From IMG/VR virus record IMGVR_UViG_3300036770_007495, positions 62,001-126,000 of that record: a stretch of 64,000 nucleotides of DNA. One strand, written 5' to 3'. How positions within the stretch are numbered: position 1 is the first letter of the stretch; the number at the start of each line of letters is the position of its first letter. Under the pieces are notes generated by a model. The model made no database searches. It saw nothing but the letters and a program-made list of their open reading frames with translations, and was not told the origin of the DNA. This document shows, piece after piece, positions 1 through 11,721 of the stretch. The position numbers and the translations under genes are program-made.

Positions 1-58
1 AGATTAGCGTCTGCCTGAAGAGCAGAAAAGACTGGAGCGTTACCAGTAGCAGCCACCA
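1..58 (+). tRNA. tRNA-Phe(GAA), 5' end outside window
   Basis: ctgc-ctGAAga-gcag; T-arm actgg-agcgtta-ccagt; ACCA. Confidence 0.8.
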
Positions 59-62
59 TTTC

Positions 63-151: not shown

Positions 152-306
152 TTTCAAGTTGGAGATGACGCGCTGTGTTGTCTTTAAAACGCTAACCAAC
201 AAGAACAAACTAGTAATGCCGCTAGTATATACAAAGGCAGTCCTCATCACCTTATGGTGCTGATATGGCTTCTTTTTCCGTGAGCCCGTTAATCACGGAA
301 TATTTT

Positions 307-397
307 GGAGAGAGCCCGGCTAGACGAGGAGCAATCTTGGAAAGATTGTAACACTTCGAAAGAGGTGTTAAGGGTGCGAGTCCCTTTCTCTCCTCCA
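307..397 (+). tRNA. tRNA-Ser(GGA)
   Basis: ggagaga/tctctcc; caatc-ttGGAaa-gattg; long V arm; CCA. Confidence 0.85.
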
Positions 398-403
398 TTT
401 TAT

Positions 404-493
404 GGGCAGTTAACTAGACAAGCGCGCTGGGACCGACTTGAAATCGGATCGAGGTCGAAAGGCCTTGGGGTGCAAGCCCTCAGCTGCCCGCCA
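404..493 (+). tRNA. tRNA-Ser(TGA)
   Basis: gggcagt/gctgccc+GCCA; ccga-ctTGAaa-tcgg; long V arm. Confidence 0.85.
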
Positions 494-499
494 TTTTAT

Positions 500-574
500 G
501 CGGATATAATTCAGTGGTAGAATATCTCGTTGCCAACGAGAGTGTCGTCGGTTCAAATCCGACTATCCGCTCCA
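500..574 (+). tRNA. tRNA-Gly(GCC)
   Basis: canonical cloverleaf, TCCA. Confidence 0.95.
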
Positions 575-579
575 ATTAA

Positions 580-643
580 CCGTAGTGGAGAATCTACGGC
601 ATAACAAAATCTCTTAGATTGCAGAAACCTAACAAAACGCTGC
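580..643 (+). ncRNA. two tandem small H-type pseudoknots
   Basis: ccgtag/ctacgg with loop gaga pairing tctc; ttag/ctaa with loop gcag pairing ctgc; A-rich linkers. Confidence 0.45.
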
Positions 644-655
644 GCCTATTTCAAA

Positions 656-732
656 CGGGATGTAGCTCAGCCTGGTAGAGCGCTTGCTTTGGGAGCAAGA
701 TGTCGTCGGTTCGAATCCGGCTATCCCGACCA
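656..732 (+). tRNA. tRNA-Pro(TGG)
   Basis: canonical cloverleaf, ACCA. Confidence 0.95.
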
Positions 733-734
733 AT

Positions 735-816
735 TTTGCGGAGCAGAAATGCTAGTGTGCGGCCGAAAGACTGATGATGCGGCGTTTCGGGTAAAACCTC
801 GCGATCATCTCGCAAA
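735..816 (+). ncRNA. structured RNA, unknown
   Basis: tttgcg/cgcaaa closing stem, gca-gaaa-tgc, gatgat/atcatc. Confidence 0.35.
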
Positions 817-822
817 TTTAGA

Positions 823-924
823 TGTGGGTGAAAGTCCCAGAAGCATCACAGATGCTTGTTCCACGACGGGCTCTAAAGACTTGAACTGACAAGTGCAAGG
901 GTGAGTGTAAAGGTACTCCCCACA
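823..924 (+). ncRNA. multi-hairpin structured RNA
   Basis: tgtggg/cccaca; aagcatc/gatgctt; acttg/caagt; gagtg/tactc. Confidence 0.45.
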
Positions 925-934
925 AATTTCAAAT

Positions 935-1009
935 GCGGTGTAGATGTTAATGGCTGCACACCTGACTTCCAATCAGAAGGAGGGGGTTCGATTCCCCCAC
1001 ACCGCACCA
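935..1009 (+). tRNA. tRNA-Gly(TCC)
   Basis: ctga-ctTCCaa-tcag; TTCGATT T-loop; ACCA. Confidence 0.9.
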
Positions 1010-1013
1010 ATTT

Positions 1014-1234
1014 TATCAGAAGGAAGTTGGCTTAGAAGCAGCCATCTATAATGAGTGAAGCGAAGTACGAGTCTCCAACATCAACGGCCTAGTAAGGTGA
1101 CTGTGATAATGCATGATGTATCAGAGTCAGATATTGGCTCATGCGTTGGATATCGTCTGACTGCGGATAGTAAAAGAGCACCCCGTAAATGGTAAGGCTT
1201 AATTCTTCTTAGGCGTAACAGCACACCTCTGATA
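1014..1234 (+). ncRNA. 23S rRNA H43/H44 (uL11-binding site) mimic with internal insertion
   Basis: GGAAGTTGGCTTAGAAGCAGCCATC 1022-1046 and GCGTAACAGC 1213-1222, closed by tatcaga/tctgata. Confidence 0.75.
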
Positions 1235-1242
1235 TATTTTAA

Positions 1243-1336
1243 GGATCCATGACAGAGCCTGGTATTGTACGTCCCTGCTAAGGACAGGTCAGCCCCTAAA
1301 AAGGCTGCGTAGGTTCAAATCCTACTGGATCCGCCA
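1243..1336 (+). tRNA. tRNA-Ser(GCT)
   Basis: ggatcca/tggatcc+GCCA; long V arm. Confidence 0.9.
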
Positions 1337-1374
1337 TTTTGTTGCTTTAAATCGTTCATGAGATAAATCACGTT

Positions 1375-1800
1375 ATGAATGAAATTGAACAACTTAAATC
1401 AGAGTTTGAAGAACTCAAAAATGCACAACAAGAAACAATCTTTGAAGACCACAACATTGTGGGTGATGCAGAATCATATGTTGGTTCATTGAACAGTGGT
1501 CTAAAAGAGCTAGTTAATCACTACGTGATGGATTATCTCATCATCATGAATGCGTTAAAGTTCATGACTGGCCCAGTTGCTTGCTATCAAGGCAAAGCAA
1601 TTGAGGCACAAACAATCAAGTTTGAAACAATGAAAGAGTTGAGAGACTTTCTCAAAGACAAACAATATTTGCTGTATGTAATTGTTGCACATGCAAGTGT
1701 TACATATGAAGAAGTGGAATGGACTAAAACAATGGCACCTAATGCTAAAACAATTGGTGCAAAAATTTCATACCTCTTTAGAGGTCATATTCTAGAGTAA
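1375..1800 (+). CDS. hypothetical protein
   Basis: 141-aa ORF filling the gap between tRNAs. Confidence 0.75.
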   Translation: MNEIEQLKSEFEELKNAQQETIFEDHNIVGDAESYVGSLNSGLKELVNHYVMDYLIIMNALKFMTGPVACYQGKAIEAQTIKFETMKELRDFLKDKQYLLYVIVAHASVTYEEVEWTKTMAPNAKTIGAKISYLFRGHILE

Positions 1801-1808
1801 TTTCAATT

Positions 1809-1885
1809 CGGGTGGTGTCTGGACAAGTAAACGAACTCGGTTTGGAGTCGAGTAAATGTGGGAGCGTTACCCACTCACCCGACCA
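1809..1885 (+). tRNA. tRNA-Pro(TGG), divergent second copy
   Basis: cgggtgg/tcacccg+ACCA; ctcgg-ttTGGag-tcgag. Confidence 0.75.
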
Positions 1886-1889
1886 ATTT

Positions 1890-2312
1890 ATGAGTACAAA
1901 GCATCAAGGGGATATCTCTGAAGCTTATGCAATAGCAAAATTCTTAGAGTTAGGATTTGTAGTAGCAAAGCCAGTAGGAGACAATCAGAGATATGATCTT
2001 ATCATTGATAGAGGCAATGGATTTGAACGAGTTCAAATAAAAACAGGTACACATTCTACTGGATGTGTAGTTGCATATACAAGATCTGTGTACAATAATA
2101 CAAAACAGTCAAAAGTTGTTGGATACAAAATATCGGAAATTGATCTAATTGCAGTAGTTGTTCACAATACTAAATGTGTTTATTTGTTGCAAAGCAAAGA
2201 ATTCACTGAGGATAATAGTGACAACGTAAAGAAAACCATCTACCTTAGAATTGATCCACCGAGAAACAATCAAATAAAAAAAGTTAAATGGGCAAAGGAA
2301 TACGTCATTTAA
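1890..2312 (+). CDS. free-standing PD-(D/E)XK endonuclease (group I intron-associated, I-Ssp6803I-like)
   Basis: GDISE...PVGDNQRYDLIID...RVQIKTG; start moved to ATG after tRNA-Pro. Confidence 0.8.
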   Translation: MSTKHQGDISEAYAIAKFLELGFVVAKPVGDNQRYDLIIDRGNGFERVQIKTGTHSTGCVVAYTRSVYNNTKQSKVVGYKISEIDLIAVVVHNTKCVYLLQSKEFTEDNSDNVKKTIYLRIDPPRNNQIKKVKWAKEYVI

Positions 2313-2313
2313 T

Positions 2314-2389
2314 ACACGAGAAGGCACCACGGTTGGGCCGGTAGGTTGTTACCCTATTGAACTTGGTTCGATCCCAAGCTCGTGTGCCA
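2314..2389 (+). tRNA. tRNA-Asn(GTT), atypical
   Basis: acacgag/ctcgtgt+GCCA; gtagg-ttGTTac-cctat. Confidence 0.7.
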
Positions 2390-2398
2390 ATTTCAAAT

Positions 2399-2474
2399 GC
2401 TCCAGTAGCTCAATTAGAAGAGCGGTCGCCCGATTAGCGATAGGTTGTAGGTGCAAGTCCTACCTGGAGTACCA
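2399..2474 (+). tRNA. tRNA-Ile(GAT) with C33
   Basis: tcgc-ccGATta-gcga; ACCA. Confidence 0.8.
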
Positions 2475-2487
2475 ATTTCAAGAATGT

Positions 2488-2528
2488 TAGTGGTTAGGAG
2501 GATAACCACTAGAGAAAACACCTCCCCA
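2488..2528 (+). ncRNA. H-type pseudoknot (GGAGG loop / CCTCC tail)
   Basis: 9-bp tagtggtta/taaccacta, loop ggagga, cctcc 9 nt downstream, then CCA. Confidence 0.55.
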
Positions 2529-2537
2529 ATTTCAAAT

Positions 2538-2612
2538 GGACTGCGAGCTTGTGTGGATAAGCAATCGGCTTTTAACCGATAGAACAGGGTTCGAATCCCT
2601 GGCGGTCTACCA
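2538..2612 (+). tRNA. tRNA-Lys(TTT)
   Basis: atcgg-ctTTTaa-ccgat; ACCA. Confidence 0.9.
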
Positions 2613-2620
2613 ATTTCAAT

Positions 2621-2697
2621 GCCCATGTAGCCCAATTGGTAGAGGCGTATGACTTAGGATCATAATGTTGGGGGTTCGAATCCCTCTATGGGTACCA
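2621..2697 (+). tRNA. tRNA-Leu(TAG), short variable loop
   Basis: tatga-ctTAGga-tcata; ACCA. Confidence 0.85.
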
Positions 2698-2705
2698 ATT
2701 TATAT

Positions 2706-2785
2706 GGGCATGTATACCCTCGCGCTACGGACGCGTTGAAAGGTTAATTAGAAACATGCGGGTGCAACTCCTGCCATGCCCACCA
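2706..2785 (+). tRNA. tRNA-Arg(ACG), D-arm-rewired
   Basis: gggcatg/catgccc+ACCA; cgcg-ctACGga-cgcg; ggtt-AATTAGA after the anticodon arm. Confidence 0.75.
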
Positions 2786-2793
2786 TTTCAAAT

Positions 2794-2877
2794 ACACTAG
2801 CAGCAAGTGGTGGTTGCGGGTTCTCTCCAAAAGAACTGTTTTTACTAAAGTGGGTTCGATTCCTACCTAGTGTGCCA
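2794..2877 (+). tRNA. tRNA-Trp(CCA), enlarged variable region
   Basis: acactag/ctagtgt+GCCA; gttct-ctCCAaa-agaac. Confidence 0.8.
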
Positions 2878-2888
2878 TAAATATATAC

Positions 2889-3773
2889 ATGAGTGTCATT
2901 TATAATGTTGACCAATACAATCAAAGTAAAAGCATAAGTGCTAAAATAGGTGTATTGTGTCCATGTTGTACCAATTGGTTTGAGACAACTAGACTGCTGT
3001 TACAGCGAGCGTTAAAGTCTAACAGACTAAAATTTTGCTCTATAAAGTGTGCAAATAAATTTCAATCAGAAAAGATACAGCTTGAATGTGTTTTCTGCAA
3101 ACAACAAATAGAGAGAGTTGCAAGTCAACTTAAAAATGTAAAACATGTATTTTGTAATCACTCTTGTGCAGCGCAATTTAACAACAGCTTAAGACCTAAA
3201 AAGTTAAAACAACCAAAGAAAGCTAAACCTGTAGCAAAAGTTGTTGAGCACATTTGTATTAATTGTGGAAAAATATCCATTGTTTCTGCTCGTGCTAGTC
3301 TCAAAAAGAAATTTTGTTCTGGCAGTTGCAGAAACGTAATCAATAATAAAACCATAAGAGGTACGCGATCGAAAGTAGAGAAAGAGTTTGAATTAGCAAT
3401 TAAAGCAAATTTTCCAGATTTGAAGTTTAATTGCAATGACAGACAAATTCTTGATGGGTTGGAGCTTGATTTTTACTTTCCTGAAATTAATCTAGCAATA
3501 GAATTTAACGGTATATGGCATTTAAAACCAATACGTGGAGAAGAACTTTTAGTAAAATACAAACAAAGAGACAAACACAAAAAACGCTTATGTGAAGAGA
3601 AAAATATTAAACTTTTAGTGCTTTGTGATGAAGCTAGTTCCAACAAATCAATTGATGAGCAAGTACATAAAGCAATTGCGTTTTTAAAACAATTTCAACA
3701 TGCTTCAGAAGCTACAGTAGACGGGCCGCTCCCTCTTAAGGAGAATATTTGTGTGGTTGCAACTACCACCTGA
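2889..3773 (+). CDS. free-standing Vsr/DUF559-like endonuclease with N-terminal Cys-rich zinc repeats
   Basis: repeated CxxC..FCSxxC; LELDFYFPEINLAIEFNGIWH. Confidence 0.8.
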   Translation: MSVIYNVDQYNQSKSISAKIGVLCPCCTNWFETTRLLLQRALKSNRLKFCSIKCANKFQSEKIQLECVFCKQQIERVASQLKNVKHVFCNHSCAAQFNNSLRPKKLKQPKKAKPVAKVVEHICINCGKISIVSARASLKKKFCSGSCRNVINNKTIRGTRSKVEKEFELAIKANFPDLKFNCNDRQILDGLELDFYFPEINLAIEFNGIWHLKPIRGEELLVKYKQRDKHKKRLCEEKNIKLLVLCDEASSNKSIDEQVHKAIAFLKQFQHASEATVDGPLPLKENICVVATTT

Positions 3774-3780
3774 AGCACCA
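3702..3780 (+). tRNA. tRNA-Lys(CTT)
   Basis: gcttcag/ctgaagc+ACCA; ctcc-ctCTTaa-ggag. Confidence 0.75.
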
Positions 3781-3787
3781 ATTTAAT

Positions 3788-3863
3788 GCTCCGTAAGCAG
3801 ATATAGTGATGCGGCTCTCTTGTAAAGAGCAGACAGGGGGTGCAAGTCCCTCACGGAGCTCCA
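3788..3863 (+). tRNA. tRNA-Thr(TGT)
   Basis: gctct-ctTGTaa-agagc; TCCA. Confidence 0.85.
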
Positions 3864-3963
3864 TTTAAGGAAGTATCAGCTGAGGTGGACGCTCTGCGGA
3901 GAAGTGTTACTTGTGCAAGAAAGCTAAACGAACGCTTTCCAGCTAGCTTCCAACAATTTCAAT

Positions 3964-4037
3964 AGCTCCTTAGCATAAAAGTAATGCATCTGGCTTTGAC
4001 CCAGATGAAGTTGGCGCAATACCAGCAGGAGCTGCCA
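3964..4037 (+). tRNA. tRNA-Gln(TTG)
   Basis: tctgg-ctTTGac-ccaga; GCCA. Confidence 0.85.
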
Positions 4038-4042
4038 TTTTT

Positions 4043-4225
4043 ATGAAAACAGCAATTGATTTAAAAGAATATTTGAGTCAAAACTCTTTAACAGATGTAT
4101 TTGAAGAACCTGTCAAAGTTTTAATTCAAATGGAAGACGATACTTATAAACATTGTACAATATGCACAATGGCATATGTTTGGTCTGGTGAAAGTGAAGC
4201 ACAAAAATGCCTTATAATAGGTTGA
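4043..4225 (+). CDS. small hypothetical protein
   Basis: 60-aa ORF between tRNAs. Confidence 0.6.
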   Translation: MKTAIDLKEYLSQNSLTDVFEEPVKVLIQMEDDTYKHCTICTMAYVWSGESEAQKCLIIG

Positions 4226-4237
4226 ATATTTTCAAAA

Positions 4238-4312
4238 TGCTCTCGGAAGGTAAGATCTTGAACTGTCTCATAAGCAGTTATAAAGTGGGTGCAATCCCCA
4301 CGGGAGCGACCA
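4238..4312 (+). tRNA. tRNA with CAT anticodon (elongator Met or Ile2)
   Basis: actgt-ctCATaa-gcagt; reduced D arm; ACCA. Confidence 0.7.
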
Positions 4313-4352
4313 ATTTAAGGAAATTCAATATAATAAGAGAGTAAATTTAAAA

Positions 4353-4430
4353 GTCCCTGTAGTTAACGGAAGGCTATAACATCGCCCTTTCACGGCGAAA
4401 TACCCGGTTCGACCCCGGGTGGGGATGCCA
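4353..4430 (+). tRNA. tRNA-Glu(TTC)
   Basis: tcgcc-ctTTCac-ggcga; GCCA. Confidence 0.9.
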
Positions 4431-4444
4431 AAACAATTTCAAAT

Positions 4445-4518
4445 GACCCTGTAGATTAATAGTAAATCGCCACGCTTTCAACGTGAAGACGACGGAGCAT
4501 AACCGTCCTGGGTTGCCA
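4445..4518 (+). tRNA. tRNA-Glu(TTC), second copy
   Basis: cacg-ctTTCaa-cgtg; GCCA. Confidence 0.8.
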
Positions 4519-4527
4519 ATTTCAAAT

Positions 4528-4605
4528 AGAGCCGAAGTCAAACAGCATTGACGCTCGCCTGTCGAGCGAGATATAAAGTGGGGGCAGCACCCACCGGCTC
4601 TGCCA
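4528..4605 (+). tRNA. tRNA-Asp(GTC)
   Basis: ctcgc-ctGTCga-gcgag; GCCA. Confidence 0.85.
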
Positions 4606-4614
4606 ATTTCAAAT

Positions 4615-4693
4615 TCACGGGTAGTTTATTTTTGGGTAAAACAACCTTGGCATGCAAGGGAGAAGGGTGTTCAAATCACTCGCCTGTGAGCCA
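4615..4693 (+). tRNA. tRNA-like gene with non-canonical anticodon loop (ggCATgc)
   Basis: acceptor, D and T arms and CCA present; no U33. Confidence 0.55.
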
Positions 4694-4701
4694 ATTTCAA
4701 A

Positions 4702-4775
4702 CCTCCTGTAGCTCAAAGGTAGAGCTCTCGGTTGATAACCGAAGGACGTAGGATCGTTACCTGCCAGGAGGACCA
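4702..4775 (+). tRNA. tRNA-Ile(GAT)
   Basis: tcgg-ttGATaa-ccga; ACCA. Confidence 0.85.
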
Positions 4776-4784
4776 ATTTCAAAA

Positions 4785-4860
4785 GCCCCTATAGCCCAAC
4801 AGCAGAGGCAATACGTTAAGGGCGTATTCAGTGCAGGTGCAAATCCTGCTAGGGGCACCA
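4785..4860 (+). tRNA. tRNA-Leu(AAG), short variable loop
   Basis: atacg-ttAAGgg-cgtat; ACCA. Confidence 0.8.
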
Positions 4861-4865
4861 ATTTT

Positions 4866-5048
4866 ATGAAAATAATTGTCAGCACAGAACAAGAAAAGAT
4901 TGCTTTATTAAAAGCTTCAAAATACATTCATGATCTAAAATGTTTAGATACAAGCGATGATGCTGTTAATACAATAGCTCATTTGTATTGTGCACCATTT
5001 TTAATTGAAGTTGATCCTAATTTAAAAATTTCAGTTGAACAACAATAG
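4866..5048 (+). CDS. small hypothetical protein
   Basis: 60-aa ORF between tRNAs. Confidence 0.6.
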   Translation: MKIIVSTEQEKIALLKASKYIHDLKCLDTSDDAVNTIAHLYCAPFLIEVDPNLKISVEQQ

Positions 5049-5077
5049 GAAAGAGTATATAATGTTGTAGATAAAAA

Positions 5078-5153
5078 TCCCAAGTAGCTCAGCGGTAGTA
5101 GCGAGTGGCTGTTAACCACTAGGTCGCTGGTTCGATCCCAGCCTTGGGAGCCA
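5078..5153 (+). tRNA. tRNA-Asn(GTT)
   Basis: canonical cloverleaf, GCCA. Confidence 0.95.
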
Positions 5154-5163
5154 TTTTCAAAAT

Positions 5164-5237
5164 TGCAGGTAGGTGGTCTAGTGACCATTCTGGGCTCATA
5201 ACCCGGAGAGCGTGGTGCGATTCCCGGCCTGCTACCA
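5164..5237 (+). tRNA. initiator tRNA-fMet(CAT)
   Basis: GGG/CCC at the base of the anticodon loop, 1-72 mismatch, ACCA. Confidence 0.8.
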
Positions 5238-5246
5238 TTTTTTAAG

Positions 5247-5274
5247 TTGATAAAGACAAACAATACGCTATAAT
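5247..5274 (+). promoter_or_regulatory. sigma70-type promoter
   Basis: TTGATA-16 bp-TATAAT, 6 nt before ATG 5281. Confidence 0.6.
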
Positions 5275-5280
5275 AATAAC

Positions 5281-5469
5281 ATGAATACATACGAACAATT
5301 GAAGGAGCTTGTAGAAGCATTTGCCATTGAAGACGAAAAGTTCAATAATGGCAAGTCGTCTGCAAGTACAAATGCACGTAAGCGTTTACAAGATATTATT
5401 GTGCTTGCAAAGACTCGTCGCAACGAAATTACGGCTGAGAAGAATGCACGCAAGCAAGCAAAAGCTTAA
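5281..5469 (+). CDS. histone H1-like (Hc1-family) small basic protein
   Basis: EKFNNGKSSASTNARKRLQDI..LAK..R.EI pattern. Confidence 0.7.
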   Translation: MNTYEQLKELVEAFAIEDEKFNNGKSSASTNARKRLQDIIVLAKTRRNEITAEKNARKQAKA

Positions 5470-5481
5470 GCGTAGTAATTA

Positions 5482-5557
5482 GCCCGGTTAGCTCAGCGGT
5501 AGTAGCGCCTCCTTTACACGGAGATTGTCGGCGGTTCGATCCCGTCACCGGGTACCA
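5482..5557 (+). tRNA. tRNA-Val(TAC)
   Basis: canonical cloverleaf, ACCA. Confidence 0.95.
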
Positions 5558-5563
5558 GTTTAT

Positions 5564-5638
5564 GGGGCTCTAGTGCTAGCGGTAACACGTCGCCTTTGCA
5601 CGGCGAAGTTTGGGGTTCGACTCCCCAGAGCTCCACCA
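5564..5638 (+). tRNA. tRNA-Ala(TGC)
   Basis: G3:U70 pair; ACCA. Confidence 0.95.
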
Positions 5639-5647
5639 ATTTCTAAA

Positions 5648-5734
5648 TGATCGGCGTCTGAAATGTATAAAGCCGGATAACCCGCGGAGATTGGGTCGGA
5701 TGAGATTAATAATGACGAGTATACCCGGTCACCA
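5648..5734 (+). ncRNA. CCA-ending RNA with an acceptor-like stem but no cloverleaf
   Basis: tgatcgg/ccggtca+CCA; gtata/tatac. Confidence 0.45.
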
Positions 5735-5736
5735 AT

Positions 5737-5878
5737 TCCTCGGTAGTGTAATGGTGCAACGGTCAGCAGCGAAAGATCGGGTCTTCCTTAAGGGTCTGCA
5801 GCAAACAGACCAAACAGGCGAATCTTAGCGAATGTCTGCGGACAACAGGTGTTGGTTCGAATCCAACCTGAGGACACA
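5737..5878 (+). ncRNA. tRNA-shaped RNA with the anticodon arm replaced by a large domain
   Basis: tcctcgg/ctgagga; D-like tagtgtaatggtgcaac; perfect T arm gttgg-ttcgaat-ccaac. Confidence 0.6.
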
Positions 5879-5880
5879 TT

Positions 5881-6082
5881 TTGATAGCAAGGAAAGACGC
5901 AGTTCGCGGGTAATGAGAAAGCAATGAGTGGGGCCGGGTTGGTCAATGGGCTGCAAATGATTGCAACGTCTGCAGCGAGCACCAACTGGACGGAAGCATT
6001 GCAAAGTGTAGATTACAAATGGAGAATGGGCAAGGAGGCTGGGTCTACCAGCATTAACTCCCCGATACCTCACCAGCTATCA
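5881..6082 (+). ncRNA. ~200-nt structured RNA
   Basis: ttgatagc/gctatcaa closing; gcaatg/cattgc; gttggt/accaac; gctgca/tgcagc; gctgg/ccagc. Confidence 0.55.
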
Positions 6083-6086
6083 ATTT

Positions 6087-6225
6087 CAGAACATTCAATC
6101 AACCGCAACACAGAGGTCGATCTTGCAAGCCGAGTACCTCTGACGGCTCTGATAACAGGTGCGCTTGCACAAGCCTTGCGAATGGTTCTGCATGCACCAG
6201 CTGAATTAGCTACTCAGTGTGGTGC
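6087..6225 (+). ncRNA. structured RNA
   Basis: cagaac/gttctg; cagaggt/acctctg; gcacca/tggtgc. Confidence 0.45.
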
Positions 6226-6237
6226 TAAATTTTCTAT

Positions 6238-6312
6238 GGACGTTGAGCCAGCTGGCGTGGGCGGAAGTCTGCAAAACTTCTTAGGTGGGTTCGATTCTCA
6301 CAACGTCCTCCA
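6238..6312 (+). tRNA. tRNA-Cys(GCA)
   Basis: gaagt-ctGCAaa-acttc; U73; CCA. Confidence 0.9.
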
Positions 6313-6337
6313 ATTCTAGTACGCGTATCCGGCGCGA

Positions 6338-6404
6338 GGCTCGTCGCTGGTTAATTCTAGACACCTGGTCTTCCAACGTCGCAGGTGAAGTTAACGAGCC
6401 GCCA
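6338..6404 (+). ncRNA. T-armless tRNA-like RNA
   Basis: ggctcgt/acgagcc+GCCA; ctgg/ctag; cacctg/caggtg. Confidence 0.5.
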
Positions 6405-6408
6405 ATTT

Positions 6409-6837
6409 ATGAAAACAAAAATGCTGATATTTGGTTTGCCGGGATCCGGCAAAACCACTCTTGCAAAAAAGTTAGTTGGTGCAGTTGCTGACTCTATGCA
6501 CATCAATGCTGATGCAGTTAGAAGTGCAGTTGATGATTGGGATTTTTCGCAACAAGGCCGCATTCAACAAGCACATAGAATGCATCAATTGAGTGAAGCA
6601 AGCAATGCTGCTCTTGTAGTTTGTGACTTTGTCTGTCCTTACCAAAGCACAAGAGATGCATTGTTCAATGATTACTTTCAAGTGTTCATGGATACCATCA
6701 AGAGCAGCAGATTTGCTGATACAGATGCAATTTTTGAACATGTCAATTATTGTGATTTTCGAATTACAAATTTTGACCAAACAGAAATTTTTATCAAATT
6801 CATTGTTGATTTAGTTGTAAAACCATCCATTGTATAA
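6409..6837 (+). CDS. adenylylsulfate kinase-like P-loop kinase
   Basis: GLPGSGKTT, NADAVR, WDFS..GR, DFVCP. Confidence 0.75.
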   Translation: MKTKMLIFGLPGSGKTTLAKKLVGAVADSMHINADAVRSAVDDWDFSQQGRIQQAHRMHQLSEASNAALVVCDFVCPYQSTRDALFNDYFQVFMDTIKSSRFADTDAIFEHVNYCDFRITNFDQTEIFIKFIVDLVVKPSIV

Positions 6838-6856
6838 GAGTAAATAAACAACAAAA

Positions 6857-6939
6857 GCCCCGGTAGCGGATCCGCCTTCTAAGCGGAGCATTGTACCGTA
6901 ATTGGACGCATACAGGTTCGAGTCCTGTTCGGGGTACCA
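6857..6939 (+). tRNA. tRNA-Arg(TCT), D-arm-rewired
   Basis: gccccgg/tcggggt+ACCA; tccgc-ctTCTaa-gcgga; gcgg 6866-69 pairs ccgt 6896-99 followed by AATTGGA. Confidence 0.8.
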
Positions 6940-6950
6940 CTTTTCAAAAA

Positions 6951-7027
6951 TCCCTGCGTATCATAATTAGCTAATGTCCTCGCCTGTGAAGCGAGCTAAG
7001 ACGGGGCAGAACCGTCCCAGGGAACCA
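6951..7027 (+). tRNA. tRNA-His(GTG) lacking G-1:C73
   Basis: ctcgc-ctGTGaa-gcgag; ACCA. Confidence 0.75.
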
Positions 7028-7030
7028 TTT

Positions 7031-7215
7031 CCGGAATAGTTGCAAACGAGGGTTCGAAACCTCAAATAGCATCTAACAGAGATTCAAAGCATCGAAGTTT
7101 ATAGGTTGAACGGGACCCTGACAGGTTGATGGTGTGTTCGAGTGCACACGTGCTTTGAGTCTCGATAATTTATCTGGCTGTTGCAATGAGGTAAAGACCC
7201 AACGCAATGCCAAAT
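7031..7215 (+). ncRNA. structured RNA with T-loop-like hairpins
   Basis: gagattcaaagca/tgctttgagtctc; gagg-gttcgaaa-cctc; gtgtg-ttcgagtg-cacac. Confidence 0.45.
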
Positions 7216-7369
7216 AGTCCAAAAAGTAAAAGTAAAATATTCATAGGGGCTGCGTTCTCAAAACTATGGCAAAGATTTTGCTATAGCAATGAAAATAACA
7301 GCAATGCATGAAATTCCAAAAAACATGTGGATTATTTCATAGAAGTTCATATAGTTATTTAGTCAAAAT

Positions 7370-7457
7370 GCTGGTGTGGCTGAGCGGTCTAAAGCACTTG
7401 CCTTGTAAGCAAGCGGGAGTGATCCCATCGTCAGTTCGAATCTGACCACCAGCTCCA
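7370..7457 (+). tRNA. tRNA-Thr(TGT) with long variable arm
   Basis: cttgc-ctTGTaa-gcaag; V arm ggga-gtga-tccc. Confidence 0.85.
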
Positions 7458-7463
7458 TTTTCC

Positions 7464-7742
7464 ATGAACAATCGTAGATCATTCTTCAAAAGCCTCATTG
7501 GCTTGATCGTTGCACCAAAGGTTGCTGAAGCTCTACCAACAGAAGCTCCAATACCATCAATTCCTGTATATGCTCCAATGAGGAGATTAAGGGCTAATTG
7601 GTCAATTGAAGTGGAGCAAGATCTTATGCGTATGCATGGCATAGACCTTGATGCAATGCTATTAACAAATATGTCAAAAGCAATTCAGGAAGAAATTGAT
7701 AATGACATGGTAAAAAAATTAACAAAGAAAATGGGGAGTTAG
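7464..7742 (+). CDS. Tat-like signal fused to a major-capsid-protein fragment
   Basis: NRRSFFK; C-terminal half aligns to gp23 of this window. Confidence 0.75.
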   Translation: MNNRRSFFKSLIGLIVAPKVAEALPTEAPIPSIPVYAPMRRLRANWSIEVEQDLMRMHGIDLDAMLLTNMSKAIQEEIDNDMVKKLTKKMGS

Positions 7743-7806
7743 TATAGAAGCAGTACATTGGCTCGACACGCCAAAGAAGAAGGAGCGTTACCTTCACTCC
7801 CTACCA
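7733..7806 (+). tRNA. tRNA-Val(GAC)
   Basis: ttggc-tcGACac-gccaa; ACCA. Confidence 0.8.
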
Positions 7807-7807
7807 T

Positions 7808-7882
7808 GGTTCCTAAGCATAGATAGCGATGCACACGATTGGTATTTGTGATAGAGGAGTGCAAATCTCCTAGGAACCTCCA
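7808..7882 (+). tRNA. tRNA-Thr(GGT)
   Basis: cacga-ttGGTat-ttgtg; TCCA. Confidence 0.8.
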
Positions 7883-7924
7883 CTCATCGCAGACAACACA
7901 TAAAATGCATGTATGTGAAGCAAC

Positions 7925-8011
7925 TAATAAAAAAACAATGTAGTTGCAAATAGCGAAGTTGAGATTAAAATAATGCACAAGAGCAAGATAAAGCTCAATG
8001 ATCTTTGAAAA
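7925..8011 (+). promoter_or_regulatory. rRNA-like promoter plus boxA-like antiterminator
   Basis: A-tract, TTGCAA-16 bp-TAAAAT, TGATCTTTGAAAA at 7999-8011. Confidence 0.55.
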
Positions 8012-8014
8012 ATT

Positions 8015-8420
8015 CCGTGGTGGCAGAACAATGGGTCGCCAGCCCATAATGCACTAAGCAACGTCTGAAAAGACGCCAGGTAGGTTGAAGAAGTTGTGCC
8101 GGATAAAGCTGAAATAGCCAAGGTTGGCTAACCTTGAGTGACGTAAGAAGACAACAAATCGCAATAATCTTGCTGATGGCTGTATTGTCTTGGAGATAAC
8201 CATTCCTCCCTATCATTAACAGTGAGAGTAATTAACTCATTGGATAGTGGCTGAATAATCCGACACAATGGAGGCTTGTGAGTAGTCAGGAATCTCACCC
8301 ACACTAATTTTGGCTAACGAATTCTGTATGCCACCTCCCGTAACCAATGGAAAAATTACAGAATGCGTTTGTGGGAGTCGCAGAAACCTTCAGTAATTTT
8401 CAACAATCTCGCAAGAGGAT
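8015..8420 (+). ncRNA. large ornate ncRNA candidate (GOLLD/ROOL-class)
   Basis: many complementary segments incl. ggtggca/tgccacc, ttgtgccggat/atccgacacaa, cccaca/tgtggg, attctgta/tacagaat; no credible ORF. Confidence 0.6.
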
Positions 8421-8441
8421 AAAAAGGAAACACACATACAC

Positions 8442-8657
8442 ATGAATAAAAACGCATATGAAATTCGCTTGGAAGTTCTTGGAATGGCTCATGGCACCGT
8501 CTGGAGCCTGTACCATGAAAAGCTCAATGCAATGAGAATCAATGCTGATAAAGCAAATCAGTTCTTTGATGAGACATTGGTTGACAAGCTTGCGCCTAGC
8601 GCAAAGGACGTTTTGTCTTATGCTGCTGAACTCTATGAGTTCGTAGAAGGCAAATAA
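8442..8657 (+). CDS. small hypothetical phage protein
   Basis: AAGGA upstream; MNKNAYEIRLEVL..A...LYEFV pattern typical of T4-like phages. Confidence 0.75.
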   Translation: MNKNAYEIRLEVLGMAHGTVWSLYHEKLNAMRINADKANQFFDETLVDKLAPSAKDVLSYAAELYEFVEGK

Positions 8658-8705
8658 AGTCAAAGTGGTGCTGGATAACCACATTAAACACCAGCTATTT
8701 TCAAT

Positions 8706-8801
8706 GCTCCAGTAGCTCAATTGGTAGAGCGGAAGGCTTATACCCTTCGTATGCACCAGATTAGTGCGCGGTTGTCGGTTCGAGCCCGGCCTGGAGTACC
8801 A
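8706..8801 (+). tRNA. tRNA-Ile(TAT) with long variable arm
   Basis: gaagg-ctTATac-ccttc; canonical D and T arms; ACCA. Confidence 0.85.
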
Positions 8802-8809
8802 TTTTACAT

Positions 8810-9265
8810 ATGAGATTTGAAGGAAAAAAAGTGATTGTTGCAAGTGGATATTTTGACCCACTGCACATTGGTCATGTTGAATATCTCAAACTAGCAAGAA
8901 TGCTGGGTGATATGCTGGTAGTCATTGTCAACAATGACAAGCAAGCTGCTCTCAAAAAAGGAAAATCATTCATGTCTGAAAATGACAGATGGCGCCTTGT
9001 GGGTGAACTCAAATGTGTGGATATTCCAGTTCTCTCCATTGACGATGGTGCATCTGTATCTGATACAATTCAAATGCTTGTAGACAAAGGTTTCAATCCT
9101 GCCATCTTTGCCAAAGGTGGTGATAGATTCAGCAATGAAATACCTGAAGCACAGGTGTGCAGAGAGCATGGTATTCAAATCGTGGATGGTCTTGGAGACA
9201 AGATTAGATCATCATCAGAATTAGTTTCCAACGCATATGAAAGTAGATTACAAATTTGTCCCTAA
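8810..9265 (+). CDS. cytidylyltransferase-family protein (TagD/RfaE-II-like)
   Basis: SGYFDPLHIGH; KGGDR; SSS. Confidence 0.85.
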   Translation: MRFEGKKVIVASGYFDPLHIGHVEYLKLARMLGDMLVVIVNNDKQAALKKGKSFMSENDRWRLVGELKCVDIPVLSIDDGASVSDTIQMLVDKGFNPAIFAKGGDRFSNEIPEAQVCREHGIQIVDGLGDKIRSSSELVSNAYESRLQICP

Positions 9266-9590
9266 AGGATGGGGGTTTGAAAAGTGGATTTGCAACAATG
9301 AAAAATATTGCGGCAAATTGCTCTTCATTGCCAAAGATAAGAAGATTTCTTGGCATTATCACAAACTCAAGGATGAACATTTTTACATCAACAAAGGTTC
9401 AGTAATAGTCCTTTATGGTGACAATAAAAATATCAATTTAGCTACATCTGAAATTCTGAAGCAAGGTGATGTATTTCATGTTCCAGTTGGAATGATTCAC
9501 AGATTAATTGCTTTAGAAGATACAGAGGTATTTGAATTTTCGACTCAACATTTTGACGAAGATTCTATCAGAGTGGAAAAAGGTGATTGA
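9237..9590 (+). CDS. cupin-domain protein (sugar isomerase-like)
   Basis: KGWG.E.W, SWHYHKLKDE, G..HR, EFST. Confidence 0.8.
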   Translation: MKVDYKFVPKGWGFEKWICNNEKYCGKLLFIAKDKKISWHYHKLKDEHFYINKGSVIVLYGDNKNINLATSEILKQGDVFHVPVGMIHRLIALEDTEVFEFSTQHFDEDSIRVEKGD

Positions 9591-9592
9591 AT

Positions 9593-9668
9593 GGCCAAGT
9601 GACGGAATGGCATACGTATCGGTCTCAAAAACCGAGTTCTGTGGGTTCGACTCCCACCTTGGCTACCA
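9593..9668 (+). tRNA. tRNA-Leu(CAA), short variable loop
   Basis: tcggt-ctCAAaa-accga; ACCA. Confidence 0.85.
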
Positions 9669-9679
9669 TAAATATACAG

Positions 9680-10063
9680 ATGAACTTTACTGCACTGTAT
9701 GAGCAAAAAATGTACGCTTTGATTTTTGAAAAAAACTATGGAACAATTCCTAATCCTCCAATTGATGTAGTACTCTCAAAAAGGGCAACAAAAGATCTAA
9801 AAAAAGATCCTATGCTTCGTGCCAATTTCATTAAACGAATGAAGAATTGGGAAAATTTACGCCGTGATCGTGTGTGGGAAAAATTAGCTGCATCATCACG
9901 TTTAAATGACAAATTCAACTTGCCCAGAAACATTACAGCTGTTGCTTTGGATTTGGGTGGAGCACATTGGTATAGAGCCATTGGATACATTGATGACAAC
10001 AATGTGTATCAGATTTTCTCCATCATGACGCACGAAGCATTCAATAAAATAGCTGTATCATGA
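9680..10063 (+). CDS. HigB/RelE-like toxin-fold protein
   Basis: C-terminus LDLGGAHWYRAI...IFSIMTHEAFNK resembles HigB pattern IGG.KYRLI...IGTH.EYDK. Confidence 0.55.
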   Translation: MNFTALYEQKMYALIFEKNYGTIPNPPIDVVLSKRATKDLKKDPMLRANFIKRMKNWENLRRDRVWEKLAASSRLNDKFNLPRNITAVALDLGGAHWYRAIGYIDDNNVYQIFSIMTHEAFNKIAVS

Positions 10064-10100
10064 TTTTTTTACAGCATTATGTTATCCGAGAAAATAAATA

Positions 10101-10436
10101 ATGCCAATGAACGACCACAAGAATTTAATCACTGAATTTCTTAGCGGAGGATGGATCATTTTGATCATTGGAGCATCTGGAATGGGTGCAAGAATTCTGT
10201 GCAGTGGTGTTCGTCATTCTGCATTAGAGATCGTTAAAAAAATAATTGCAGCAGCTCTTTGCTCTGGCATTGCTTGGTATGTGTTGGAGCAGACTGATTT
10301 AGCAAGTCTCACCAAAGCAATTGTTTACGGTGTAGTTGGTGTTGTAAGCCCTGAACTCATCAATGGTCTCATCAAGATTGGTGCAAAATTTGCCAAGAAC
10401 CCAACCAAATTCTTCGACGACAACAAGAGCAATTGA
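10101..10436 (+). CDS. holin-like membrane protein
   Basis: 111 aa, three hydrophobic segments, charged C-tail. Confidence 0.55.
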   Translation: MPMNDHKNLITEFLSGGWIILIIGASGMGARILCSGVRHSALEIVKKIIAAALCSGIAWYVLEQTDLASLTKAIVYGVVGVVSPELINGLIKIGAKFAKNPTKFFDDNKSN

Positions 10437-10464
10437 AATTTCATGATTTGCATTAAATAAATGC

Positions 10465-11721
10465 ATGAATCGTAGAGAATTTCTTCGAGTTGGTGCTGCA
10501 GCAGGCATTTCTTTGCCAACAATGTTGCGCAGTCAAGATGCTACCAAAGTCAAAGCAGCATCAGTAATCCAAATCTTCTTGCCTGGTGGCATTGCACATC
10601 AGGATGCATGGGATTACAAACCATATGGATCACCAGAGTATCGTGGTCCATTTGCAGGCATCAAGACCAAAATTGATGGAGTTCACTTTGGTGCATTGTT
10701 GCAAAACACTGCTAAAATCAGCGACAACTTGACTGTGATTCGTTCCATGACACATGGTGAAGCAGCCCACGAACGAGGTGTGCACAACATGTTGACTGGC
10801 TACAGACCTTCACCTGCTTTGACATATCCATCATTTGGAACGGTCATCAATCACGAGTTGGGCGGCAGAAACAACTTGCCTGCATATGTGCTTGTGCCAA
10901 ATCAATTTGCTCCTGAGAATGGCACGGGATATCTATCAACACGTTACGGACCATTTGCAGTGGGGGCAAACCCAGAAGATCCTTCATTCTCCGTAAAGGA
11001 TCTCAAGTCACCTGCAGGAGTAACAGATCAGGCATTTGAACGTCGCAGAGCTCTTCTTGGTGTTGTTGATGACCATTTCAAAACCAGAGAATCACATGTG
11101 GATGCAGTCAAAGCCATGGATTCATTTTATAATGATGCATACAGCATGGTATCATCAACCCAAGCACGAGAAGCATTTGAATTGAGCAAAGAAACTGATG
11201 CAATGCGTGATGCATATGGCAGAAATGCTGCAGGCCAGCGCATGTTGCTGGCTCGCCGATTGGTAGAAGCAGGTGTTCGCATGGTCACTGTCACATATGG
11301 CAGCTGGGATCATCACAGCAATCTCAAAGGTGCGTTTGAGAGCAACATGATGAACTTTGATAAAGCATATGCCATGCTCATTACTGACTTGAAGCAAAGA
11401 GGCTTACTTGATTCTACACTGGTGATGATTACATCAGAATTTGGTCGCACACCAAAGATTAATGGAACCAATGGCCGCGATCACTGGCCTCGTGTGTTTT
11501 CCACTGTGCTTGCTGGGGGTGGAACCAAGGCTGGTTTTGCATATGGAACCAGCGATGCACTTGCTGCGGAACCGGAAACAGATCCTGTTTCGCCTGGTCA
11601 ATTGGCTGCAACCATGTACCATCTCATGGGCATTGATCCAAGAAAGAAGCTCATGACTCCTGATTTAAGACCAGTTGAAATTGTGTATGAAGAAGATCCT
11701 ATTGAAAAGATCTTGGCTTAA
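10465..11721 (+). CDS. DUF1501 protein with Tat signal
   Basis: NRREFL; IFLPGG..HQD.WD.KP; WDHH; SEFGRTPKIN..GRDHWP. Confidence 0.9.
   Translation: MNRREFLRVGAAAGISLPTMLRSQDATKVKAASVIQIFLPGGIAHQDAWDYKPYGSPEYRGPFAGIKTKIDGVHFGALLQNTAKISDNLTVIRSMTHGEAAHERGVHNMLTGYRPSPALTYPSFGTVINHELGGRNNLPAYVLVPNQFAPENGTGYLSTRYGPFAVGANPEDPSFSVKDLKSPAGVTDQAFERRRALLGVVDDHFKTRESHVDAVKAMDSFYNDAYSMVSSTQAREAFELSKETDAMRDAYGRNAAGQRMLLARRLVEAGVRMVTVTYGSWDHHSNLKGAFESNMMNFDKAYAMLITDLKQRGLLDSTLVMITSEFGRTPKINGTNGRDHWPRVFSTVLAGGGTKAGFAYGTSDALAAEPETDPVSPGQLAATMYHLMGIDPRKKLMTPDLRPVEIVYEEDPIEKILA

What the first reader, a model, noticed from the sequence alone, without database searches (positions are those of the whole stretch)
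5737..5878. tRNA scaffold with a large domain in place of the anticodon
Seen: acceptor, D-like arm and perfect T arm retained; the anticodon arm is extended (gcag/ctgc, aagat/atctt, ggtctg/cagacc); ends CACA not CCA. Too short for a group I intron or tmRNA. Inference: a natural tRNA-scaffolded aptamer, paralleling the insert-bearing rRNA mimic.
Basis: partly seen in the sequence, partly recalled or inferred. Interest (0 to 1): 0.6.

Follow-up and report, generated by a model that had tools for sequence, protein, structure and literature searches.

The report
Conserved tRNA-shaped RNA without an anticodon
In the tRNA gene array of an uncultured T4-like phage sits a conserved 139-142-base RNA gene with a normal tRNA frame whose anticodon loop is replaced by a 72-base rod-shaped domain. 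It most likely makes a non-decoding tRNA-like small RNA rather than a spliced tRNA.

Summary
Window 5737-5878 has a 7-bp acceptor stem, a D arm, a 5-bp anticodon-type stem and a perfect T arm. A 72-nt domain (5767-5838) replaces the 7-nt anticodon loop. The 3' end reads ACA, whereas all 27 neighbouring tRNAs encode CCA.

Four phage lineages carry the element at 98-100% identity, insert included, while the adjacent tRNA-Ala and tRNA-Val are only 68-91% identical. One recombinant allele (L002) keeps every cloverleaf helix, with two compensatory pairs in the T stem.

ARAGORN in intron mode calls it tRNA-Asp(GUC) with a 65-nt intron. That product would be poor (A.G mismatch, U37, C73, 7-nt variable loop, no CCA), L002 cannot form it, and RNA-run contigs show no spliced junction.

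My best reading is a non-decoding tRNA-like stable RNA, cut out by tRNA-processing enzymes, whose extended arm is a binding platform. Three CGAA motifs lie in predicted internal loops, as in Y RNAs, but neither a Ro60 gene nor an Rfam YrlA match was found here.

Side finding: at least 26 distinct phage tRNA genes (32 loci) carry 46-60-nt inserts. In 21 of them the insert is a circularly permuted copy of the end stem of Y-like RNAs that lie beside Ro60-like genes. The window element is not a sequence-level member of that group.

The parts
5737..5743 (+). acceptor stem, 5' strand (UCCUCGG)
   Evidence: 7/7 pairs with 5868-5874. In L002, pairs 6:67 and 7:66 swap G.U/G-C and stay paired.
5746..5759 (+). 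D arm (GUGU AAUGGU GCAA): 3 pairs plus G10.A25, with G18 G19 present
   Evidence: The same GUGUAAUGG D arm occurs in many normal and insert-bearing phage tRNAs.
5762..5766 (+). anticodon-stem equivalent, 5' strand (GUCAG), pairing with 5839-5843 (CGGAC)
   Evidence: In the window lineage A.G is a mismatch; in L002 it becomes A-U and G-C becomes G.U, so the helix is kept.
5767..5838 (+). 72-nt domain in place of the 7-nt anticodon loop. Rod made of CAG/CUG (5767-5769/5836-5838), S2 (5773-5777/5822-5826) and S3 (5793-5798/5806-5811), with a 7-nt loop CAGCAAA (5799-5805)
   Evidence: MFE fold of 5762-5843. 98-100% identical in 4 lineages. No match in Rfam and none elsewhere in about 1 Mb of fetched phage DNA.
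5768..5775 (+). CGAA motif 1 (AGCGAAAG), at the S1/S2 junction
   Evidence: Read from the sequence. Position in the fold. Motif definitions from PMC4201824 (GNCGAAN0-1G) and PMC12135203 (CGAA in an internal bulge).
5817..5824 (+). CGAA motif 2 (GGCGAAUC), in the S3/S2 internal loop, 3' strand
5827..5834 (+). CGAA motif 3 (AGCGAAUG), in the S2/S1 internal loop, 3' strand. It overlaps the GUC that ARAGORN reads as an anticodon (5834-5836).
5844..5850 (+). 7-nt variable region (AACAGGU)
   Evidence: invariant in all four lineages.
5851..5867 (+). T arm (GUUGG UUCGAAU CCAAC)
   Evidence: L002 has GCCG(U)G/CCGGC, which gives two compensatory pairs.
5868..5878 (+). acceptor 3' strand (5868-5874), discriminator C5875, then ACA instead of CCA
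   Evidence: ACA is conserved in all four lineages.
5640..5734 (+). Neighbouring non-tRNA unit that travels with the element. Its ends are invariant and can pair (GAUCGG CGUC ... GACG ... CCGGUC ACCA); its middle is hypervariable.
   Evidence: It lies upstream of the element in the window, L065 and L066, and downstream in L002.
5247..5274 (+). sigma-70-like promoter candidate for the Val-Ala-unit-element-Cys stretch
   Evidence: 11/12 match, with no terminator-like site in 4800-7000. This is a consensus match only.

Best explanation
The element is a gene for a non-decoding, tRNA-shaped small RNA. It is transcribed with the neighbouring tRNAs. Its intact acceptor/T/D core would let RNase P and a 3' tRNA-processing enzyme cut it out (ACA rather than CCA follows the discriminator). 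That would release a stable RNA of about 139 nt. Where the anticodon loop should be, it carries an 82-nt irregular rod (stem, internal loop, stem, internal loop, hairpin). Function therefore lies in this arm, which is conserved at the sequence level. The arm most plausibly acts as a binding platform for a protein or RNA partner, in the manner of a Y RNA. YrlA is a tRNA-like module joined to a stem-bulge-stem bearing CGAA; here the ends sit in the acceptor stem instead of the binding stem. Shown: the anatomy, the conservation, the maintenance of the cloverleaf helices, and the lack of an anticodon loop and of CCA. Inferred: processing, stability, and any binding partner.
For: Anatomy.

Conservation: the element is 98-100% identical among the window, L065 and L066. 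The adjacent, syntenic tRNA-Ala is 68-70% identical and tRNA-Val 70-91%. Conservation stops at the element's ends.

Not coding: L065 has a 1-nt insertion inside the element.

Cloverleaf kept in L002: two double compensatory changes in the T stem, the acceptor pairs kept, and the anticodon-type stem improved. The same allele changes the bases ARAGORN needs for a 7-nt loop, and ARAGORN -i finds no tRNA there.

All 27 other tRNAs of the array encode CCA; this element has ACA in all lineages.

No spliced joint is among the joints listed from three metatranscriptome runs, and one RNA-run contig spans the element with the insert.

Precedent: T4 itself has a 139-nt stable RNA (rnaC) with a T arm and acceptor-like ends inside its tRNA cluster.

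Y-like hints: three CGAA motifs lie in predicted internal loops. Two of them are on the strand that leads into the variable region and T arm, which is where YrlA carries its GNCGAAN0-1G motif (PMC4201824, PMC12135203).

Other phages insert a true Y-RNA-type stem at this same tRNA position.
Against: There is no direct evidence of a processed RNA, because the RNA data are contigs only. The fold is not more stable than shuffles. Helices S2 and S3 show no covariation because they never vary. Rfam YrlA/Y RNA models give no hit. No Ro60/TROVE/DUF2828 gene lies in the window plus 3.6 kb upstream; the other roughly 155 kb of the genome was not readable. The insert is not detectably similar to the Y-like inserts of other phages. 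The three CGAA motifs were noticed after the fact, and about 0.5 would be expected by chance. Homologues were found through an exact 19-mer, so only close relatives of the 5' part could be seen.
Confidence: 0.5

Rival explanations
1. It is an intron-containing tRNA-Asp(GUC). A 65-nt intervening sequence (5768-5832) is removed, and the exons are joined to give a decoding tRNA.
For: No tRNA-Asp is among the 27 tRNAs of the array. GUC at 5834-5836 is invariant in four lineages. Many phage tRNAs with canonical anticodon arms carry 46-60-nt inserts near this position, and these must be either tolerated or removed.
Against: The product would have an A.G mismatch in the anticodon stem, U37, G38, a 7-nt variable loop, C73 and no CCA. 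From established knowledge, E. coli tRNA-Asp identity rests on G73, the GUC anticodon, C38 and G10. L002 gives a 9-nt loop and ARAGORN makes no call there. ARAGORN -i placed introns and anticodons inconsistently on related long tRNAs. The predicted splice sites lie beside or inside a continuous helix, not in a bulge-helix-bulge (inspection). The size rules out a group I intron, and no ribozyme family matches. The 'intron' is as conserved as the 'exons'. No spliced joint appears in the RNA-run contigs.
Confidence: 0.15
2. It is a decaying or hitch-hiking remnant of an insert-bearing tRNA, with no function of its own. Its uniformity would come from recent recombinational spread of a small cassette among related phages.
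For: Units of the array are shuffled between relatives at ...CCA-AUUU junctions. The D stem has a G.A mismatch, there is no anticodon loop and no CCA. The fold is not unusually stable. L002 is a recombinant with a breakpoint at 5838.
Against: The neighbouring unit 5640-5734 has invariant ends but a completely different middle in each lineage. A recent transfer of the whole block therefore cannot explain the identity. The diverged 3' part in L002 keeps all pairings, including two compensatory pairs. The element is present in subsurface, freshwater and soil data sets.
Confidence: 0.15
3. It is a decoy for enzymes that recognise the tRNA body, such as host anticodon nucleases or other tRNA-targeting defences, or modification enzymes. 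It would offer a tRNA frame with an uncleavable or trapping arm.
For: It has an intact L-shape core but no anticodon loop. The S3 loop CAGCAAA differs from the anticodon loop of the phage's own tRNA-Cys (CUGCAAA) only at position 33. Phage tRNAs are proposed to counter tRNA-targeting defences (PMC10264068, abstract seen).
Against: Nothing here tests it directly. No nuclease or antitoxin-like gene is linked to the element. The resemblance to the Cys loop is a single 7-mer.
Confidence: 0.1

Closest known systems
Phage T4 rnaC (species 1 RNA), a 139-nt stable RNA of unknown function in the T4 tRNA cluster
   Same: It is encoded inside the tRNA gene cluster of a T4-type phage and has the same size (139 against 139-142 nt). 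It has a canonical T arm (GGUUCGAAUCC), ends that pair like an acceptor stem, no encoded CCA and no anticodon function.
   Different: There is no sequence similarity beyond the T loop. rnaC lacks a D arm and carries its large hairpin in the D/anticodon region, and its fold is very stable (z -4.6 against -0.3). Here the whole cloverleaf frame is kept and only the anticodon loop is replaced.
YrlA-type bacterial and phage Y RNAs (Rfam RF02553), partners of Ro60/Rsr
   Same: Both combine a tRNA-like D/T module with a long stem-bulge-stem arm bearing CGAA-type motifs. The motif lies on the strand that runs into the variable region and T arm (PMC4201824, PMC12135203).
   Different: The topology is circularly permuted: the ends are in the acceptor stem and the arm is closed by a loop. 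There is no Rfam hit and no Ro60-like gene in the 68 kb readable. The motifs match GNCGAAN0-1G only in part.
Insert-bearing phage tRNAs found here (IMG/VR loci L004-L061)
   Same: They share the D arm (GUGUAAUGG...), an insert directly after the D arm in the anticodon-stem region, an AGGU-type variable loop and a UUCGAAU T loop. The family covariance model ranks the window element first in the window.
   Different: Those have canonical 5-bp/7-nt anticodon arms for about 15 anticodons, and most end in CCA. In 21 of them the insert is UAUCCUG-NN-AAGGAUAC-NN-ACAGCAA, a permuted Y-like end stem. The window insert is longer (72 nt), is not similar in sequence and leaves no anticodon loop.
Engineered tRNA scaffolds, in which recombinant RNAs are inserted in place of the anticodon arm (my own knowledge, not checked here)
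   Same: The design is the same: the tRNA frame provides processing and stability, and the cargo replaces the anticodon loop.
   Different: This one is natural, conserved and phage-encoded, and its cargo is of unknown function.

Membership tests
tRNA (RF00005) | 7-bp acceptor stem and T arm with a UUCRANY loop | tested here: met
tRNA (RF00005) | 5-bp anticodon stem closing a 7-nt loop with U33 and a purine at 37 | tested here: not met
   The stem is present, but it closes 72 nt. The local alternative is UGUC-UGCG-GACA.
tRNA (RF00005) | Rfam model score at or above the gathering score (29 bits) | tested here: not met
   No hit at E<=10 in 5640-6240, nor at E<=1 in 1-10500.
Intron-containing tRNA (bulge-helix-bulge type) | Splice sites in two 3-nt bulges separated by a 4-bp helix | tested here: not met
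   By inspection, the predicted sites 5767/5768 and 5832/5833 lie in or next to the continuous CAG/CUG helix. No formal BHB search program was run.
Intron-containing tRNA (group I intron) | Catalytic core of about 200 nt or more that matches the group I model | tested here: not met
   The insert is 65-72 nt, and no Rfam family reaches E<=10.
Intron-containing tRNA (any type) | Spliced RNA observed | tested here: inconclusive
   No joint skipping the insert is among the joints listed, and one RNA-run contig keeps the insert. These are contigs, however, and mature tRNAs are poorly captured.
YrlA / Y RNA | Match to RF02553 or another Y RNA model | tested here: not met
   A permuted version could not be scored with the tools available.
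YrlA / Y RNA | Encoded next to a Ro60/TROVE gene | tested here: not met
   None found in the window plus L062. The rest of the 224.7-kb contig was not readable.
YrlA / Y RNA | GNCGAAN0-1G / CGAA motif in a bulge of a stem-bulge-stem | tested here: inconclusive
   Three CGAA motifs lie in predicted internal loops, each a partial match to the longer motif.
YrlA / Y RNA | Binds Ro60 | not testable with these tools
   The insert-only HMM gives no hit. The PWM gives no hit. The covariance model leaves the hairpin unaligned.
T4 rnaC-like stable RNA | Sequence or fold homology to T4 rnaC | tested here: not met
   Only the 11-nt T loop is shared.
T4 rnaC-like stable RNA | About 140 nt, lies in a T4-type tRNA cluster, has a T arm and paired ends, and is non-decoding | tested here: met

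The most novel reading that the evidence does not exclude
The element is a natural, circularly permuted Y RNA: a tRNA-topology RNA that uses the tRNA-maturation pathway to deliver a Ro60-type or PNPase-recruiting stem-bulge-stem arm. It would be one divergent representative of a wide, undescribed practice in phages of building Y-RNA modules into tRNA genes.
Probability: 0.2. Interest if true: 0.8.

Novelty: new variant of a known kind. Interest (0 to 1): 0.62.

Why it matters
tRNA-like stable RNAs in phage tRNA clusters (T4 rnaC and rnaD) are, to my knowledge, still listed without a function; the T4 record calls rnaC only a small, stable RNA. This one keeps the entire tRNA frame, replaces only the anticodon loop, and evolves far more slowly than the true tRNAs beside it. 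That makes it a clean case for asking what such RNAs do.

The related finding may matter more. Many phages place a Ro60-type Y-RNA stem inside otherwise normal tRNAs, next to Ro60-like genes. This links tRNA supply, RNA quality control or repair, and possibly a still unknown way of removing or tolerating inserts in bacterial tRNAs.

The design also matches the engineered tRNA scaffold used to express recombinant RNAs.

Tried and rejected
- **Rfam.** Scans at the gathering threshold and at permissive E-values gave nothing at the element.
- **tmRNA.** ARAGORN reports none here.
- **ARAGORN intron call.** The tRNA-Asp call was considered and downgraded.
- **Small self-cleaving ribozymes.** No Rfam match. 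Reading the sequence, I saw no hammerhead core motif in the element; that check was by eye only.
- **Coding.** No ORF is conserved, and L065 has a frameshifting indel.
- **Similarity of the insert.** Nothing elsewhere in the window or in about 1 Mb of fetched phage DNA.
- **Intron-less allele or host tRNA with the same halves.** The 3' half matched only an unrelated tRNA-Asn. The 5' half matched only chance coding hits in 185,579 genomes. The diverged L002 3' half matched only itself.
- **Known phage records.** No close relative of the window or of the element was found.
- **Ro60-like gene.** tblastn and hhalign with DUF2828 proteins against the window and L062 were negative. A scan of viral contigs returned only the 80 best of more than 576 relatives, so it says nothing about this genome.
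- **Reads.** The runs are kept as contigs only, so RNA ends, strand and splicing could not be read.
- **RNAalifold on the long-tRNA family.** It recovered only the tRNA helices because the inserts were misaligned.

Full report
**Context**

The window is part of an uncultured T4-like phage. It encodes a gp20 portal, gp23 capsid protein, gp15-like sheath stabiliser, prohead protease and ribonucleotide reductase. It also carries planctomycete-type DUF1501 / PSCyt2 / PSD1 genes. The source contig is IMGVR_UViG_3300036770_007495, 224.7 kb. No close relative of the window was found among deposited phage genomes.

Positions 300-9700 form a tRNA array. ARAGORN finds 23 tRNAs there and Rfam adds four more. 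The finding lies between tRNA-Ala (5564-5638) and tRNA-Cys (6238-6312). A promoter-like site lies at 5247-5274, and no terminator-like site lies in 4800-7000. Co-transcription with the neighbouring tRNAs is therefore likely, though inferred.

**The observation**

| Feature | Coordinates |
|---|---|
| Acceptor stem | 5737-5743 with 5868-5874 (7 pairs, one G.U) |
| D arm | 5746-5759 (3 pairs plus G.A; G18 G19 present) |
| Anticodon-type stem | 5762-5766 with 5839-5843 (5 bp, one A.G) |
| Variable region | 5844-5850 (7 nt) |
| T arm | 5851-5867 (perfect) |
| Discriminator and 3' end | C5875, then ACA |

The anticodon-type stem encloses 72 nt (5767-5838) where 7 nt would be expected. These 72 nt fold as an irregular rod. 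It consists of CAG/CUG, an internal loop, AAGAU/AUCUU, a second internal loop, and GGUCUG/CAGACC closed by the loop CAGCAAA.

All 27 other tRNAs of the array encode CCA; this element does not. The Rfam tRNA model does not reach even E = 10 on it. Its folding energy is ordinary (z -0.3).

**Homologues and conservation**

Exact-word scans found the element in four contigs:
- the source contig itself;
- L002, a 19.8-kb IMG/VR contig;
- L065 (OGWP01004707.1);
- L066 (JAAOEI010066919.1).

A contig from a freshwater RNA run covers it with 6 differences and 3 gaps, which points to a fifth lineage.

In the window, L065 and L066 the gene order is Val, Ala, unit, element. Identity across these lineages differs sharply by unit:

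| Unit | Identity |
|---|---|
| Element | 98-100% |
| Adjacent tRNA-Ala | 68-70% |
| Adjacent tRNA-Val | 70-91% |

Similarity ends a few bases beyond the element's 3' end.

The upstream unit 5640-5734 has invariant, mutually pairing ends but a wholly different middle in each lineage. The uniformity of the element is therefore not explained by recent transfer of the whole block. L065 carries a 1-nt insertion in the arm, which excludes a conserved reading frame.

L002 is a recombinant. Its first 101 nt are identical to the window and its last 41 nt are 73% identical. On the four-sequence alignment the cloverleaf survives this change:
- The T stem has two double compensatory changes (U-A to C-G, twice).
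- Acceptor pairs 6:67 and 7:66 exchange G.U and G-C.
- The anticodon-type stem goes from A.G to A-U and from G-C to G.U.

The inner helices S2 and S3 never vary, so comparison says nothing about them.

**Is it a spliced tRNA?**

With introns allowed, ARAGORN calls tRNA-Asp(GUC) with a 65-nt intron. I rate this low, for these reasons:
- The product would have an A.G mismatch, U37, G38, a 7-nt variable loop, C73 and no CCA. From established knowledge, tRNA-Asp identity rests on G73, the GUC anticodon, C38 and G10.
- L002 cannot give a 7-nt loop, and ARAGORN does not call it.
- On related long tRNAs ARAGORN placed introns and anticodons inconsistently (against my positional analysis).
- The predicted splice sites are not in a bulge-helix-bulge. 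The size excludes a group I intron, and no ribozyme family matches.
- The 'intron' is as conserved as the 'exons'.
- Among the joints listed from contigs of three metatranscriptomes, none skips the insert, and one RNA-run contig spans the element with the insert. This point is weak, because contigs cannot show mature small RNAs.

**What it resembles**

*T4 rnaC.* T4 encodes rnaC ('species 1 RNA', 139 nt) in its tRNA cluster, a stable RNA for which the record lists no function. It has a T arm and paired ends. It shares no sequence with this element beyond the T loop.

*A wider class of insert-bearing phage tRNAs.* A gapped pattern (this D arm, 78-105 nt, a T loop) retrieved 60 IMG/VR loci. In 32 of them besides those carrying this element (26 distinct sequences), the flanks form a perfect 7-bp acceptor stem around a 118-131-nt unit. 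These are true tRNAs. They have 5-bp/7-nt anticodon arms for about 15 anticodons, a few with 8-nt loops, and most end in CCA. Each carries a 46-60-nt insert after the D arm, in or just before the 5' strand of the anticodon stem. Rfam's tRNA model reports several of them, including ones with other D arms, as full matches carrying large insertions.

*The Y-RNA connection.* In 21 of these tRNAs the insert reads UAUCCUG-NN-AAGGAUAC-NN-ACAGCAA. The same words form the end stem of free-standing RNAs in the same arrays: UUAGGAUAC-NN-ACAGCAA ... GUAUCCUG. Some of those free-standing RNAs match Rfam YrlA below threshold over its full length.

The commonest protein cluster in these loci is DUF2828 + DUF7788 + vWA. 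Its predicted structure matches Ro60 from a Thermus phage, Xenopus, Deinococcus and human (Foldseek E 6e-9 to 8e-5, TM about 0.55). Of 80 further loci fetched with this protein, 64 carry the Y-like unit, usually about 450 nt upstream on the same strand. Those tRNAs therefore carry a circularly permuted, tetraloop-capped copy of a Ro60-type Y-RNA stem. I found no description of this in the paper library.

**Is the window element a member of that class?**

It is not a member at the sequence level.
- An HMM of the insert alone does not find it.
- A weight matrix of the Y-like 5' motif does not find it.
- The family covariance model scores it 33.3 bits, against about 28 for ordinary tRNAs, and leaves the hairpin unaligned.
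- No Ro60-like gene is present in the window or in the 3.6 kb upstream.
- A relaxed structural pattern (AGG, a 6-nt stem, CAGCAA, the stem's partner) is met at 5790-5811 and only once more in 128 kb. This is suggestive only.

Separately, the arm holds three CGAA motifs: AGCGAAAG at 5768, GGCGAAUC at 5817 and AGCGAAUG at 5827. All lie in predicted internal loops. Two are on the strand that runs into the variable region and T arm. That is where YrlA carries its GNCGAAN0-1G motif (PMC4201824), and it fits the 'stem, CGAA bulge, stem' criterion used to find the Y RNAs of phage phiLo (PMC12135203). About 0.5 CGAA would be expected by chance, and I noticed the motifs after the fact.

**Conclusion**

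The best-supported reading (about 0.5) is a non-decoding tRNA-like small RNA. The tRNA frame serves processing and stability, and the conserved arm is the working part. The arm is most plausibly a binding platform of the Y-RNA kind; I give about 0.2 to it truly being Ro60-type. A spliced tRNA-Asp (0.15), a functionless remnant spread by recombination (0.15) and a decoy for tRNA-directed enzymes (0.1) remain open.

Its suggested function is unproven.

Noticed in passing
L004-L061 (IMG/VR loci), e.g. L013:8431-8548(-), L014:651-770(-), L026:9808-9928(+), L055:729-848(-): At least 26 distinct phage tRNA genes (32 loci) of 118-131 nt have canonical anticodon arms (about 15 anticodons; a few 8-nt loops) and a 46-60-nt insert after the D arm. 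In 21 of them the insert reads UAUCCUG-NN-AAGGAUAC-NN-ACAGCAA. A second insert type occurs in L048, L057 and L061. Whether the inserts are removed or tolerated is unknown.
   Followed up: partly
L067-L146, about 450 nt upstream of the match at 3001; also L013, L016, L026, L031, L033, L046, L047, L052, L060: Free-standing Y-RNA-like units (UUAGGAUNNNN-ACAGCAA ... partner strand) lie beside a DUF2828+DUF7788+vWA gene whose predicted fold is Ro60 (TROVE+vWA). 64 of 80 such loci have one. The tRNA inserts above are a circularly permuted, GNNA-capped copy of this end stem.
   Followed up: partly
window 5640-5734: A non-tRNA unit ending in CACCA has invariant, mutually pairing ends and a middle that is completely different in each of four lineages. 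It shares GAUCGG(C)GUCU with the element's arm (5775-5784). Its function is unknown.
   Followed up: partly
window 5633/5730, 5732/6081, 5881/6236 (joints); L002 8090-8240: Units of the array (tRNAs and non-tRNA modules) are reordered or dropped between related phages at ...CCA-AUUU junctions. This is seen in DNA and in RNA-run contigs.
   Followed up: partly
window 7370-7457, 8706-8801, 2794-2877, 6857-6936: Several tRNAs are oddly long: tRNA-Thr(UGU) 88 nt with a hairpin variable arm, tRNA-Ile(UAU) 96 nt with a 27-nt variable region, tRNA-Trp 84 nt, and an 80-nt tRNA-like element. The Thr and Ile forms are kept in L002.
   Followed up: no
window 7940-8400: This stretch has by far the highest contig depth in three metatranscriptome runs (up to about 6,500). 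It is non-coding by appearance, with only a weak manA-RNA match (18.5 bits, 8000-8307).
   Followed up: no
window 1812-2312 and 6385-6837: A PD-(D/E)XK endonuclease (PF11645) and a small P-loop kinase (AAA_33 / APS-kinase-like) are encoded inside the tRNA array.
   Followed up: no
window 10465-15873: Two DUF1501 genes and a PSCyt2/PSD1 (DUF1549/DUF1553) gene sit directly upstream of the T4-type structural genes. These families were first described in planctomycetes (my own knowledge), which hints at the host.
   Followed up: no
window 26552-27481: QueF (7-cyano-7-deazaguanine reductase) lies next to formyltransferase-like and kinase-like genes. This may be a 7-deazaguanine pathway.
   Followed up: no
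L062 229-672 (about 3 kb upstream of the window start): ARAGORN calls a 444-nt tmRNA with tag peptide GAEQCMLLNQTLG. It was not checked and may be spurious.
   Followed up: no
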